Shown here: positions 48,482 to 61,659 of the stretch, piece after piece
Position numbering within the stretch: position 1 is the first letter of the stretch
How the letters are laid out: every line of letters starts with the position of its first letter
Source of the DNA: Haliotis cracherodii
Taxonomy: Eukaryota
DNA: 64,000 nucleotides
Assembly (NCBI RefSeq): GCF_022045235.1
Contig: NW_027266330.1
Span: 496,001 to 560,000 of the forward strand
Direction: 5' to 3'
Program-made: the position numbers and the translations under genes
Notes under the pieces: generated by a model
Seen by the model: the letters and a program-made list of their open reading frames with translations, nothing else
What the model was told of the DNA's origin: nothing
Databases searched by the model: none

Positions 48482-51400
48482 TCAAAGACCTCCTACAACA
48501 ATGGATATGCTGTCACTCCTTTCATCAGGGTTGTAACTTTTCCTATTTAGTTTTATGTCAGGAACATGTTCTACCTCACAGTCCACATTTGGAGTGGGTC
48601 CTCTTTCACTCACAAATACATCCGTCATTTCTTTATCCCCCCACATTTCTGCGATCATCAGTGGTGTCCTGCTGTATTGACCTCGACTGTTTTTGTCCAC
48701 CTTGCCCAGCTGGAGGACACGTTGAACAATATCCACATGTCCCCCAAGACAGGCCACATGGAGGATGTTGTCACCAGCATCATCAACCAGTGTCAGATCA
48801 GCTTCTTTATGAAGCAGCAGGTCAAAGACCTTTCTATGTCCCTTGTATGCTGCTGCCATCAATGGAGTCCTGCCAGACTGTCCTCTTCCATTGATGTCTA
48901 CATCGTCATGTGAGAGGATGTACTTCACAATCTCCTCATTCCCACCCCAACAGGCCAGTAGGAGGATGTTATTTCCATCTTTGTCTACCTCTGATGGGAA
49001 ACCCCCTTTACTTACAAGTAACTCAAACAGTTTCATTGATCCCTGCCGAGCTACGAACATTGCCGGTGTCCTCCCATCCAGGCCTGCACTGTGGATGTCC
49101 ACCTTGCCCAGTGACAGGACATACTTCACCATTGCAAAATTACATCCATAGCAGGCCCAGTGAAGAATGTTGTTACTGGCATCATCCACAAGTTTCAGAT
49201 CAGCTTCTTTTCTCACAAGCAAGACCAGCACTTCTCTGTGTCCCCTCCTTGCTGCCCACATCAATGGTGTCATGCCTCCATGTCCTTTCATGTTGATGTC
49301 CTCCAGACTCTGATCCAGGATGTCCTTTACTCCGTCTAGTTTCCCCTCCTTGCAGGCAGCAATGAGGTCAGTGTCCACTGCAACATCCAGATAATTGAAC
49401 CATGACAGCCAGATTATATTAGTGAGTAAATTAATGTTTAATATGAGTGAGATGTTTTCCAGTTAAATCAAGTCTGCTATATTGTCTTATTTGATGCAAA
49501 AGATCATATAGTCCCTGTTAAATATGATGATTAAATCACATGTACATTAAAAGCTACTCACAAACTGTAATATTAATCATTGGGATCGATGACATGCATT
49601 GTTCTGGTTTATATTTGTTGTGATTCTTTGTTTAAATTTTTCAGGAAAATTGTACGTTTTGGCAACCTTGCACCACTTAAAGACATCGCTCACAAACAAT
49701 TACTCAATGTATGTTTGGTCAACTTGTAAAGTAAATACTGTTAATAATTGGTAACAATTTCTAAGTTTCTTATGCAGAAACTGTGCTTAACTACACAATA
49801 TCTGCAACAGGAGGTGTTATTGAATTTATCACCTCAAACATAAATCACCACGTTGTACAATATTTGTGTCCATACCTTCATGCTGTGAAAGGAGTGGATT
49901 TGTGTCCTCCGTGGCTGCCATGCAGACTAGATAAGAAGAACAGAGCAGAAATATGAGAGCACGTTGTGGAGGTAGCATTGCCATAATAGACAGCCCCAGC
50001 CCCATCATTTGCTGAATGCCCCAAACCTTTCCTACCAGGAAAAAGTACCAGTAACCATTTTTAACTTTAACCACATCAGGTGACAGTTGCCCTCACACTT
50101 GCCCAATGCAGTACAACCCGGAAACAAAGAGCCAATGCCTCCGGTACCTTAATAACAAAGTCAACAATCGTCATCAGAAGATGTCAAATCCCCTATGTCC
50201 CTGACAAATTTGAAAGAACAAATCATCTGGCTGTTACTTTAAGTCCAACTTGATGAAAGAATTTCTATCTAATCTGTCTCTCCGTATTCAAGAGTAGTTA
50301 TTGAGCTATCAAAACAATAACATGGAATTGGGATTCTGAACTTTGTATTTCTATTTTAGGCACACATAACTAAAATGAGAGTCAAAAACAAACTTGTTGT
50401 CATGGAAACAATCAAATTTGTTAAATTCTTAAAAAGCAAAAGACACAACCTCAGTCCTTGAATAATGCATATACCAATTTTGGATGAAAAATGTTTGTAG
50501 TTCTGCTCCGGATACAACACTTACCACTGTTTCAGCTAAGCCTAACTTGTTTCCATGGAAACAGGGAAAAATCAAGTTGTTCTACGGAAACAACACCTAC
50601 CCTCACCCTTTGGAGATTAACTGCAAATTATTTCAAGGGAAATCAAGAAAACTAAAAATGACAAAAACCAGTAAACGGCTAAAAGGCACAACTTCAAGAC
50701 CTGTTGGATATATCTGCTAATTTTTGTTGAAAAAAATTGAATGGTTTTCGAATTGCGCTCCCTGCATATGTCGGGGGGAAAAGGACTTCTGGTCTTATAA
50801 CCTTGACCTACAATCTCAGTCATGAACTGCCATGAAACCAAAAGGTTTGTCACACTCCAATCATAAATGTATAGATGCAGTGTTAACACAAGCTTTTTGT
50901 TTATTTTCCACCGAGTGACCATGACATTCAACCTCATCCAACTGTATATAAAACATTGAAATAATCAGAAATTTCATGAAATTTGAACCATGATTCACAA
51001 TTTTACTTCTAGTGAACTTGACCTTATACAGGTCCGTGAATGTGATCGAGACCCTGCCTTAGAGATCATCTATACTAAGTGCAAATGTCCACAAAATTAT
51101 TGACACCTCCTATTGAGTGACATTTCAATGTCATTTCAGGGGAAAATAGGATGTATGACAGGGGTGAAGTCTCTAACATCTGTCATAAGCGTATGGTTGA
51201 CAAAACCAAGTACCAGAATTTGGGGATTAATTTATGAGAAGTCTATCTGTCAGTGTGAGTCTTGCGGGCATAAGGATTCAAGTTATCAACCCTGTATTAA
51301 GCCAAATAGACTCACACGGACATGTAAATTCACAATAAAAGACTGACAAATTGCAAAAACAGGAATTCTGTGGAGAAATTTGAATCGAGCAGGAACTGTT

Positions 51401-60400: not shown

Positions 60401-61659
60401 TATGAGACCTTTAAAGTGGAGCAAGTCCACTTGTCTTTTCTTTTGGGCCTGGGGGAAAATGCTATGCATATCGGGCATGACCCATGATTATGCCAGTCCT
60501 CCGCCAGACATTTTTGACAGCGTGTGTGCCGGTCTTGGGGAGGGATGTTTGCTGAGCAACCCGTACACAGTTTGAGGAGCTGTAAAAATGACCGTTATTT
60601 CTGAGTTGGGCAGGAAGGGATTGAAGTGTATCAGTGCGATATAAAGATCGGAAAGATACATGCAAAATTGTGAAACCAGAAGCAAAGGCGTAATGTAGAA
60701 TGCGATTTGTAACGCGATCCTAATAGCCAATGTCGTAGTATAATTTTAACACCAAAGGGGCTTGTTACGCGCTAAGGTGTAAAACCCGTAAAAAAAAGGG
60801 TAAGTGTAGTTATAAATTAACGCACCACCTTGGGTTTATGTAAAGGAAAAAACTGTATGATATAACAAAACCCCAATCCGTTTCTAATGGCCTTGGTGTT
60901 ACATGTATCAGACCATGCAACTACAATATGGATGCCATTACGGCCATTTGAATTCACCATGAACCACGCACGTGGAATAATTACAACTCTATAACTTTAC
61001 AATGTGAGGTATTACGCCTTTGCAATGAAAGAAAAGTACCATACATACAGTTTGGTCAGCCAAGGTTCTTGTCGAACGTTTAGATTTCTTATTTGTCTTG
61101 TGTTGAAAAACAGCACGTCTGTCTCATACAGATGACATAAGGACAGTGATTTGGGTGAGAGTTACTCACCCTGGCGTGAGACACCATAGAAGGTGAGGTT
61201 TTTTGTGTGGCAACATTTTTTATTAAGGAAAATGGTTACAACTATTTCATGTAGATTTTCTTGCAATAGGTGCCCTGGGGAAGATTTAATCTGACAGAGA
61301 ACACGGGGTATAGAAAAGTCAAATGTTGTAGCTGGATCAACTGCCATAGATCTGTAAAACTGTCAAAACCTCACCTTCAGTACAAAAGTCCCCCACATGT
61401 GGCTCACTGCAGCGTAGAGTACAGTGTCCGTTATCTCGGTTACAGATGTTGTCCTTGCAGGTTTGGCTGCAAGGCCGACTACAGTTATCTCCGTACCAGC
61501 CAGGAACGCATCCTTCATAGCATCTCCCTGTAACTCTGTCACAGTCTCCGACAGTTCCCCCCGACCTTGGCTCCACGGCACAGTGTGGGGAGCAGAGTAG
61601 TTCACATGATTCCCCGTAGTGGCCACGGTCACACTGTGTCGCATCTTCAGCAATTAGGA
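48482..61659 (-). CDS. Gene C: EGF-EGF-TM-ankyrin type-I receptor (signal exon not located)
   Basis: Exons 61659-61375 and 57268-56981 (phase 1-1 EGF cassettes), 52868-52766 (VADQGNNNSGTPIISSVIVAVLVLVLVLVLVLCPR, TM), 51436-51411 (LLHYIRQK), 49926-49849 (CMAATEDTNPLLSQHEGMDTNIVQR), 49377-48482 (about 8 ankyrin repeats, stop). All GT-AG with matching phases and an open frame. Confidence 0.78.
52326..52382 (-). mobile_element. 57-bp 5'-truncated copy of the I-group LINE 3' end
   Basis: Near-identical to 18879-18932; 13-bp TSD AACTGAGTTGGGT at 52313-52325 and 52383-52395. Confidence 0.88.
53042..56949. repeat. 52-bp intronic minisatellite, about 75 copies
   Basis: Unit ACAACCCAGTGGGACAGTCACTACATGTTACCTCCTGACTGACAC(CAGATGG / TAGCTGT / CAGCTGT). 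Confidence 0.98.
57570..58200 (-). mobile_element. AT-rich DIRS-like retrotransposon fragment (gag end / RT N-terminus)
   Basis: VGARLQSYLRNW..ADPF...ILKKGY and IDSLLMKGAVEVIP, typical of the start of DIRS pol. Confidence 0.65.
58690..60580 (-). mobile_element. GC-rich decayed DIRS1-like element (gag + internally deleted RT)
   Basis: N-terminal CTGCSANIPPQDRHTRCQKCLAEDWHNHGSCPICIAFSPR; gag C-terminal AVMGMRRL*...DLLALPY...LF; RT EVDTLLMKSAIE and GFRPILNLRWLNQLIEIPSFRMETL. Confidence 0.8.

What the first reader, a model, noticed from the sequence alone, without database searches (positions are those of the whole stretch)
48482..61659. Hidden EGF-TM-ankyrin ('mini-Notch-like') receptor gene family
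Seen: six exons splice in frame into EGF cassettes, a single TM helix, a short basic juxtamembrane linker and about 8 cytoplasmic ankyrin repeats. Gene A (1-2347) independently shows the same exon and phase plan and ends in an ankyrin-start motif, and a third paralogous ANK exon lies decayed at 33061-34950. Known: extracellular EGF + TM + intracellular ANK is the Notch domain order, whereas MEGF10/Draper receptors signal through tyrosine motifs. Here the EGFs are MEGF/laminin-like and no LNR, RAM (WFP) or PEST is visible. Inference: a lineage-expanded, independently assembled receptor family evolving by birth and death, plausibly in immunity or recognition. Microexons and repeat-filled introns make it easy to annotate wrongly as separate MEGF and ankyrin genes. 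Whether it is already described cannot be checked here.
Basis: partly seen in the sequence, partly recalled or inferred. Interest (0 to 1): 0.88.

Follow-up and report, generated by a model that had tools for sequence, protein, structure and literature searches.

The report
Abalone EGF-membrane-ankyrin receptor gene copy
The six exons are real and belong to a large abalone-specific family of single-pass membrane proteins with a scavenger-receptor-like outside and an ankyrin-repeat inside; public gene models already join these parts under misleading names, but this copy is unannotated and looks incomplete at both ends.

Summary
On the minus strand, two 14-cysteine EGF-like cassette exons, a TM exon, a 26-nt microexon, a linker exon and a 298-codon ankyrin exon have canonical splice sites and compatible phases. 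One junction needs correcting: 49876/49377, not 49849/49377.

The genome is Haliotis cracherodii. Its RefSeq models for paralogues on the same chromosome use the same exon and phase plan, including an 11-nt microexon.

The family is therefore real, clustered and expanded in four Haliotis species. It is not hidden as a whole: it is annotated, but named only after its ankyrin repeats. I found no paper describing it.

It is Notch-like in domain order only:
- There is no LNR, NOD or RAM.
- The cassette folds like human SCARF1.
- The ankyrin repeats are consensus-type.

Two new points emerged. A conserved [DE]xxxL[LIM] sorting motif sits in the linker exon. Homologous N-terminal modules are also fused to an nSTAND3 NTPase plus ankyrin arrays; another first-stage note on this genome had flagged that architecture.

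The focal copy matches no annotated protein. It has no detectable signal-peptide exon, and its ankyrin exon loses homology after codon ~258. No RNA evidence could be obtained.

The parts
61375..61659 (-). EGF-like cassette exon E1 (285 nt, phase 1-1; 14 conserved Cys)
   Evidence: Acceptor tttcag|, donor GAAG|gtgagg. All invariant scaffold columns are kept. tblastn to family proteins gives 42-52% identity.
56981..57268 (-). EGF-like cassette exon E2 (288 nt, phase 1-1). An in-frame ATG at 57302 sits in the acceptor tract and is a possible alternative start.
   Evidence: Acceptor gttgcag|, donor GAAG|gtaatt. Alignments. AlphaFold model pLDDT 77; top PDB fold match is human SCARF1 8hna, E = 2.8e-5.
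53042..56949 (.). 52-bp tandem array (75 copies) filling most of the E2-TM intron
   Evidence: Tandem Repeats Finder.
52766..52868 (-). Stalk plus transmembrane exon (phase 1-2). Part of the helix is encoded by a GTGCTG hexanucleotide repeat (VL)n. Alternative in-frame acceptor at 52862.
   Evidence: Sequence and splice sites, translation, period-6 repeat at 52774-52813. Same phases as the TM exon of the P0186, P0188 and P0165 models.
51411..51436 (-). 26-nt microexon (phase 2-1) encoding the basic juxtamembrane segment
   Evidence: tcag| acceptor and |gtaagt donor; translation LLHYIRQK. Paralogue models have an 11-nt microexon with the same phases. Gene A has two microexons.
49876..49926 (-). 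Linker exon (phase 1-1) carrying an acidic dileucine-type motif (DTNPLL).
   Evidence: Sequence, translation. [DE]xxxL[LIM] is present in 17 of 24 family members against 2.6 expected from shuffles.
48482..49377 (-). Terminal ankyrin-repeat exon. About 258 codons are homologous to paralogues (to about 48600). About 40 unrelated codons and a stop follow.
   Evidence: Pfam Ank_2 8.7e-57. 66-70% whole-length identity to annotated paralogues, up to 77% over the homologous 260 aa. The DNA alignment loses homology after VSER. dN/dS is 0.42-0.46.
1..2347 (-). Gene A, an annotated family member (P0165, 852 aa). Exons: SP 2347-2272, cassette 1833-1549, TM 1286-1148, microexons 932-912 and 680-667, linker 232-197, and ANK exon from 37 running about 1.95 kb past the window start.
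   Evidence: Exact protein-to-genome mapping. Borders are set by hand from the flanking bases and may be off by 1-2 nt.
33061..34950 (-). Decayed paralogous ANK exon. Its ANK similarity lies in three frames. It carries a 75-bp in-frame tandem expansion (10.7 copies), a 37-bp duplication, and a 77-bp array overlapping its 3' end.
   Evidence: ORFs, tandem repeats, tblastn frames. No EGF cassette was found between 35000 and 48000.

Best explanation
The stretch is one locus of a tandemly clustered, Haliotis-expanded family of type I membrane proteins.

The family plan, shown from annotated paralogues, runs in this order:
1. Signal peptide.
2. One or more ~95-residue SCARF/MEGF-type EGF-like cassettes with 14 fixed cysteines.
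3. A short stalk and a single TM helix.
4. A basic stop-transfer segment on a microexon.
5. A linker exon with an acidic dileucine-type motif.
6. A single large exon of consensus-type ankyrin repeats.

The focal copy follows this plan exon for exon and phase for phase, with two cassettes. It matches no annotated protein, has no detectable signal-peptide exon, and has lost the homologous end of its ankyrin exon. It is most likely an atypical or recently degenerating member.

Likely mode of action for intact members (inferred):
- The cassette binds an extracellular ligand, as SCARF1 and MEGF-type receptors do.
- The dileucine motif directs adaptor-mediated endocytosis or sorting.
- The ankyrin array is a cytosolic docking platform.

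Homologous N-terminal modules are also fused to nSTAND3 NTPase plus ankyrin arrays. This places the family beside NLR-like surveillance proteins and favours a recognition or immune role.

The confidence given applies to the anatomy and family assignment. The mode of action alone I would put at about 0.4, and 'degenerating' rather than 'missed functional gene' at about 0.6.
For: Exons, phases and translations.

Genome identity:
- Contig C67 is 63,398,646 bp, the same length as the contig of the H. cracherodii XP proteins.
- P0186 and P0188 ANK exons map at 100% and P0101 at 99.7%.

Annotated paralogues:
- P0186 and P0188 have SP, cassette (1-1), TM (1-2), an 11-nt microexon (2-1), linker (1-1) and a terminal ANK exon.
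- Gene A equals P0165.
- At least 24 fetched proteins from four Haliotis species have a Cys-rich N-terminus, a TM and ANK repeats.

Domain identities:
- The cassette model's top PDB fold match is SCARF1, E = 2.8e-5, probability 1.0. SCARF1 is also the only sequence match to the first profile and the best of three with the larger one.
- The dileucine-type motif occurs in 17 of 24 members against 2.6 expected.
- nSTAND3 lies between TM and ANK in P0034, P0041 and P0074. Their N-terminal 200 residues match the family at E = 1e-30 to 1e-45.
- Three nSTAND3 hits on C6 have a cassette exon 6-10 kb upstream on the same strand.

Constraint: the focal ANK body has dN/dS 0.42-0.46, like annotated paralogues at 0.35-0.44.

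Focal copy's defects:
- No annotated protein exceeds 77% identity to it.
- Homology to paralogues breaks after codon ~258.
- No SP exon was found.
Against: - The joins are therefore inferred from paralogue models.
- Pfam recognises no EGF family in the cassette. Only a sub-threshold DSL hit appears.
- The SCARF1 sequence match is weak (E = 0.014 and 0.12).
- The dileucine count uses related sequences, so it is not an independent-sample statistic.
- The signal-peptide exon could lie further upstream or be too divergent to find. A weak candidate lies at window-equivalent 67928-67868.
- Ligand, localisation and immune role are untested.
Confidence: 0.8

Rival explanations
1. The focal copy is a fully functional two-cassette receptor gene that the annotation pipeline missed. 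Its signal-peptide exon lies further upstream or is divergent, and the shortened ANK C-terminus is a tolerated variant cap.
For: - All six exons are open with canonical splice sites.
- Both cassettes keep every invariant scaffold residue.
- dN/dS is 0.42-0.46.
- The chance of no stop in 258 codons, if neutral since the split from P0186, is about 0.09, indels ignored.
- Candidate start codons exist at 57302 and at window-equivalent 67928.
- Multi-cassette or longer ectodomains occur in annotated members such as P0092 and P0184.
Against: - No protein model exists in a genome whose neighbouring paralogues are all modelled.
- Homology to paralogues ends abruptly inside the last repeats, and conserved repeat residues are already degraded over residues 241-260.
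- A 3.9-kb satellite lies in the intron next to E2.
- A neighbouring copy is clearly dead.
Confidence: 0.3
2. The family works like Notch. Ligand binding leads to ectodomain shedding and intramembrane cleavage, releasing the ankyrin domain to act in the nucleus or cytosol.
For: - The domain order is the same: EGF-like, TM, ANK.
- Protein-language-model neighbours of P0186 residues 1-260 are Notch clusters. The score is 0.90, but only 122-124 of 256 features are shared, so this is a lead only.
- The short ectodomain and type I topology are typical of gamma-secretase substrates (general knowledge).
Against: - Pfam finds no LNR, NOD or NODP domain in the focal exons or in full-length paralogues.
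- The extracellular stalk is about 12 residues.
- There is no WxP RAM motif in the juxtamembrane exons.
- The nearest solved ANK relatives are ankyrin-1/2, NOMPC and designed consensus repeats. No Notch appears in the best 60.
- The cassette is SCARF1-like, not Notch EGF-like.
Confidence: 0.1
3. The exons belong to separate genes, a MEGF-like gene and an ankyrin gene. The in-frame joins are a coincidence or an annotation artefact.
For: - ANK-only and EGF-only genes of these types are very numerous in this genome: 1854 ANK candidates and 1356 cassette candidates.
- No RNA evidence was available here.
Against: - The same six-part order and phase series recurs at independent loci and in four species' models.
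- The models include 11- to 21-nt microexons and several named isoforms. In my knowledge of the NCBI pipeline these need transcript support.
- The TM and linker exons have no other sensible reading.
Confidence: 0.05

Closest known systems
Scavenger receptor class F (SCARF1/SREC-I) and MEGF10/Draper/CED-1 engulfment receptors
   Same: Type I single-pass proteins. Their ectodomain is built of EGF-like repeats with the C-x2-G-x-[YW]-G-x2-C pattern. SCARF1 is the top fold match and the best or only PDB sequence match.
   Different: Only one or two cassettes directly follow the signal peptide, with no EMI domain. The cytoplasmic tail is an ankyrin array instead of NPxY/YxxL motifs or a Ser/Pro-rich tail. 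There is no one-to-one orthology.
Notch receptors
   Same: The domain order is extracellular EGF-like repeats, one TM, then intracellular ankyrin repeats. Language-model neighbours are Notch clusters.
   Different: No LNR/NRR, NOD/NODP, RAM or detectable Notch-type ANK. The defining Notch domains are those listed in PMC2770060. The ectodomain is far shorter and of SCARF type.
STAND/NLR-like proteins with ankyrin repeat arrays (nSTAND3, Pfam PF20720)
   Same: Haliotis proteins P0034, P0041 and P0074 share the homologous SP, cassette, TM and linker module and the same ANK type. The family shows lineage-specific expansion, as described for marine invertebrate immune-like families (PMC8195603).
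   Different: The focal gene and its nearest paralogues have no NTPase: the ANK exon follows the 16-codon linker directly. STAND proteins are normally cytosolic and lack an ectodomain.
RefSeq Haliotis models named 'ankyrin repeat domain-containing protein 50-like', 'kinase D-interacting substrate of 220 kDa-like' and similar (e.g. XP_071085969.1, XP_048246498.1)
   Same: These are the true family: same cassette, TM, linker motif, V-DTDL start of the ANK exon and exon phases.
   Different: The focal copy has two cassettes, a 26-nt rather than an 11-nt microexon, no found SP exon and a truncated ANK end. The RefSeq names reflect only ANK similarity, not the receptor architecture.

Membership tests
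Notch | LNR (Notch) repeats / negative regulatory region between the EGF repeats and the TM | tested here: not met
   No PF00066, NOD or NODP hit in the focal exons or in full-length paralogues. The stalk is only about 12 residues.
Notch | RAM region with a WxP motif after the TM | tested here: not met
   The juxtamembrane and linker exons read LLHYIRQK and CMAATEDTNPLLSQHE, with no WxP.
Notch | Notch-type ankyrin domain | tested here: not met
   The best 60 PDB sequence matches are ankyrin-1/2, NOMPC, DARPins, TRPA1 and latrotoxins, with no Notch among them.
Notch | Extracellular EGF repeats, a single TM and an intracellular ANK domain, in that order | tested here: met
   This is resemblance of order only.
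SCARF / MEGF10 / Draper | EGF-like repeats of the scavenger-receptor class F type | tested here: met
   Foldseek top hit is 8hna (SCARF1), E = 2.8e-5, 32% identity over 84 columns. The profile search of PDB gives SCARF1 as the best or only hit, but weakly.
SCARF / MEGF10 / Draper | N-terminal EMI domain (MEGF10/Draper) and a cytoplasmic NPxY or YxxL signalling motif | tested here: not met
   No EMI hit in Pfam. The cytoplasmic exons carry neither motif before the ANK array.
STAND / NLR-like (nSTAND3) | P-loop STAND NTPase domain | tested here: not met
   Absent from the focal gene and from P0186, P0101 and P0165. Present in the relatives P0034, P0041 and P0074 at E = 1e-18 to 1e-23.
Haliotis cassette-TM-ANK family (RefSeq models) | 14-Cys cassette on a phase 1-1 exon | tested here: met
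Haliotis cassette-TM-ANK family (RefSeq models) | Exon series TM (1-2), microexon (2-1), linker (1-1), then a terminal ANK exon opening V-DTDL | tested here: met
Haliotis cassette-TM-ANK family (RefSeq models) | Acidic dileucine-type motif in the linker exon | tested here: met
   DTNPLL in the focal copy. Present in 17 of 24 members.
Haliotis cassette-TM-ANK family (RefSeq models) | Signal-peptide exon 0.4-1.4 kb upstream of the first cassette | tested here: inconclusive
   Not found by blastn, by tblastn, or by a scan for Met plus a hydrophobic run plus a phase-1 donor, up to 12 kb upstream. Only weak candidates turned up.
Haliotis cassette-TM-ANK family (RefSeq models) | Complete ANK exon with C-terminal capping repeats | tested here: not met
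   Homology ends after codon ~258; about 70 residues of the paralogues have no counterpart.
Haliotis cassette-TM-ANK family (RefSeq models) | Transcription and splicing of the joined exons | not testable with these tools

The most novel reading that the evidence does not exclude
The cassette-TM-ANK proteins and their cassette-TM-nSTAND3-ANK relatives may form one abalone-specific system of transmembrane NLR-like sensors. In it, a SCARF-like extracellular module is wired directly to a cytosolic STAND/ankyrin signalling module. The NTPase-less members, like the family in this window, would act as co-receptors or decoys, or as cleavable receptors that release their ankyrin domain.
Probability: 0.15. 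Interest if true: 0.85.

Novelty: new variant of a known kind. Interest (0 to 1): 0.5.

Why it matters
Abalones, including the endangered black abalone whose genome this is, suffer mass mortality from infectious disease, yet their recognition receptors are poorly known. This family couples a scavenger-receptor-like ectodomain to an ankyrin array, and in relatives to a STAND NTPase. I found no description of that architecture in the literature I could search. Database names such as 'ANKRD50-like' and 'Kidins220-like' hide its receptor nature, so expression studies may misread it. The clustered copies in different states of decay, together with mosaic sequence between paralogues, fit the fast turnover typical of recognition gene families.

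Tried and rejected
- **Joined protein.** Every exon was translated and searched by reference on its own.
- **Pfam on the cassettes.** Even at E up to 10 it gave only sub-threshold DSL and PEAR1-EGF hits.
- **Signal-peptide exon.** blastn of the paralogues' first exons against the window plus 10 kb upstream found nothing. A motif scan gave only weak candidates.
- **DNA alignments of the TM and linker exons with paralogues.** These were too divergent to be informative.
- **Protein-language-model atlas.** It returned Notch clusters at score 0.90 with few shared features. I treat this as an echo of domain order, not as kinship.
- **Searches for relatives.** Three word-index searches and one exhaustive representative search returned named relatives only from Haliotis (a few unnamed ENA/Logan proteins were not assigned). 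The lists are capped and dominated by long ANK arrays, so absence elsewhere is not shown.
- **Literature.** Searches found no description of the family.
- **GC-rich stretch.** The stretch at about 58.7-60.2 kb in the E1-E2 intron was not analysed.
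Full report
**What is in the sequence**

The minus strand of 48482-61659 carries six open exon-like segments with canonical borders.
- E1 (61659-61375) and E2 (57268-56981) are 285-nt and 288-nt phase 1-1 exons. 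Each encodes about 95 residues with 14 cysteines.
- The next exon (52868-52766, phase 1-2) encodes a 12-residue stalk and a hydrophobic helix. Part of that helix is written by a GTGCTG hexanucleotide repeat.
- A 26-nt microexon (51436-51411, phase 2-1) gives the basic segment LLHYIRQK.
- A linker exon starting at 49926 gives CMAATEDTNPLLSQHE.
- The last exon (49377-48482) is a 298-codon ankyrin-repeat ORF, Pfam Ank_2 E = 8.7e-57.
- The split codons at the four junctions downstream of E2 read V, R, F and V.

I checked the frames exon by exon.

**One correction**

Two donors keep the frame for the linker exon. AAG|gtatgg at 49876 gives a 16-codon exon ending just before V-DTDL. That is exactly how the paralogues' linker exon ends.

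**Whose genome, and what is already annotated**

The closest database proteins are RefSeq models from abalones. The window's contig is 63,398,646 bp, the same length as the contig of the Haliotis cracherodii models. The ANK exons of P0186 and P0188 map to it at 100% and that of P0101 at 99.7%. The genome is therefore the black abalone assembly.

Mapping P0186 and P0188 onto their loci gives this plan:
1. Signal-peptide exon.
2. Cassette exon, phase 1-1.
3. TM exon, phase 1-2.
4. An 11-nt microexon, phase 2-1.
5. Linker exon, phase 1-1.
6. Terminal ANK exon.

Its start codon is at 2347, it has two microexons, and its ANK exon begins at 37 and runs past the window start.

At least 24 of the fetched proteins, from H. 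cracherodii, rufescens, rubra and asinina, have a Cys-rich N-terminus, one TM and ANK repeats. The joined architecture is thus already modelled in public data, under names that reflect only the ankyrin repeats. Models with 11- to 21-nt microexons and several named isoforms normally need transcript support. That last point rests on my knowledge of the pipeline, not on a test here.

**The focal copy itself**

No protein in the collection exceeds 77% identity to the focal ANK exon. This held for a profile search that included the focal sequence and for a direct tblastn of all 347 fetched proteins. It is therefore not annotated as a coding gene.

Signs of incompleteness:
- I found no signal-peptide exon within 12 kb upstream of E1, whereas paralogues have theirs 0.4-1.4 kb upstream.
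- At the 3' end, DNA homology to paralogues stops after codon ~258. About 40 unrelated codons follow, and about 70 residues of the family's last repeats are missing.

Signs of constraint:
- Both cassettes keep every invariant scaffold position.
- The ANK body has dN/dS 0.42-0.46, the same as between annotated paralogues.
- An open frame of 258 codons has only about a 9% chance under neutrality since the split from P0186.

The ANK body is also a mosaic. Residues 61-80 and 181-240 resemble the P0186 group, while residues 81-120 resemble the P0160/P0101 group. This suggests exchange between tandem copies. My reading is a member that was functional until recently and is now atypical or decaying. 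A missed functional gene remains possible, at about 0.3.

**The neighbourhood**

The closest ANK-exon paralogues (67-77% identity) all lie on the same chromosome between 1.38 and 2.40 Mb. Several have a cassette exon 4-12 kb upstream on the same strand.

Within the window, the ANK exon at 33061-34950 is dead:
- Its similarity lies in three frames.
- It carries a 75-bp (25-residue, so not a whole repeat) tandem expansion, a 37-bp duplication and a 77-bp array.
- No cassette lies upstream of it.

Birth and death is a fair description.

**What the parts are**

Pfam does not recognise the cassette. A model built from 25 cassettes (pLDDT 77) has human SCARF1 as its only strong fold match, at E = 2.8e-5. 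Laminin, Tie2, Notch and DSL-ligand EGF modules follow far behind. SCARF1 is also the best PDB sequence match, although weak.

The ankyrin repeats are consensus-type. Their nearest solved relatives are ankyrin-1/2, NOMPC and designed repeat proteins, with no Notch among the best 60. Pfam finds no LNR, NOD or NODP domain, and no RAM-type WxP motif is visible in the sequences. The resemblance to Notch is one of domain order only, which is also what the language-model search echoes.

First, the linker exon carries a [DE]xxxL[LIM] motif in 17 of 24 family members, against 2.6 expected from shuffled linkers. The focal copy has DTNPLL. This is the established consensus for adaptor-dependent endocytic and lysosomal sorting, so an endocytic receptor is a reasonable inference. 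The members are related, so the count is not an independent statistic.

Second, another first-stage note on this genome flagged an EGF, TM, STAND and ANK architecture. I confirmed part of it:
- P0034, P0041 and P0074 have nSTAND3 (E = 1e-18 to 1e-23) between the TM and long ANK arrays.
- Their first 200 residues are homologous to the family's N-terminal module, at E = 1e-30 to 1e-45.
- All three nSTAND3 hits inside a cassette-rich cluster on contig C6 have a cassette exon 6-10 kb upstream on the same strand.

The family in this window is thus the NTPase-less branch of a larger set of membrane-anchored, NLR-like proteins.

**How it most likely works**

Shown: the exon plan, the domain identities, the clustering and the annotation status.

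Inferred:
- type I topology;
- ligand binding by the SCARF-like cassette;
- sorting through the dileucine motif;
- the ANK array as a docking platform;
- a recognition or immune role, suggested by the STAND-bearing relatives and by the pattern of lineage-specific expansion described for marine invertebrates (PMC8195603).

Notch-like cleavage is not excluded, but it has no specific support.

**Novelty**

Six literature searches found no description of this architecture. The sequences are public but uncharacterised and misleadingly named. I class it as a new variant of a known kind, namely lineage-specific, domain-shuffled EGF-repeat receptors. Interest is moderate. It would rise if the link to STAND signalling proves functional.

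Noticed in passing
window 52774-52813: The transmembrane helix of the focal gene is partly encoded by a GTGCTG hexanucleotide microsatellite, giving (VL)n. Paralogues have isoleucine runs in the same place, so TM length may vary by repeat slippage.
   Followed up: partly
window 48602-49377: The focal ANK exon is a mosaic of two paralogue groups: residues 61-80 and 181-240 resemble P0186, residues 81-120 resemble P0160/P0101. This suggests gene conversion or unequal crossing-over.
   Followed up: partly
G000:C6 about 0-3.6 Mb: A dense cluster of cassette exons (about 50 of the 150 listed hits). The three nSTAND3 hits inside it each lie 6-10 kb downstream of a cassette on the same strand, within open frames of 1176-2864 codons. 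It is probably a large family of cassette-TM-nSTAND3-ANK genes.
   Followed up: partly
window 8296-9279 (-): A single 327-codon open exon made of many EGF-like repeats, 27-33% identical to the longer ectodomains of P0092 and P0165. It lies between Gene A and the decayed ANK exon. Its gene and its cytoplasmic part were not identified.
   Followed up: no
window 39960-45574 (+), repeats at 37388-37756 and 45562-45933: An intact-looking LTR retrotransposon: a PNMA/gag-like ORF and a 1494-codon pol with RT, RNase H and integrase, flanked by near-identical terminal stretches. It is inserted between the focal gene and the decayed ANK exon.
   Followed up: partly
window 13388-18382 (+): A LINE-type element with a zinc-knuckle ORF1, a 937-codon endonuclease-reverse transcriptase and an RNase H ORF. 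Another first-stage note places a ribozyme at its 5' end.
   Followed up: no
window 2632-3702 (+): A Tc1/mariner-like DDE transposase remnant, split over two frames, sits just upstream of Gene A's start codon.
   Followed up: no
window 20524-23645, 26116-30245, 9977-10773: Large satellites: a 40-bp unit with 78 copies, an 18-bp unit with 229 copies and strong GC and AT skew, and a 48-bp unit with 16.6 copies. All create long spurious ORFs.
   Followed up: no
window about 58700-60200: A GC-rich stretch (about 51%) in the E1-E2 intron with many short overlapping ORFs of odd, Gly/Pro/Arg-rich composition. It was not searched or analysed.
   Followed up: no
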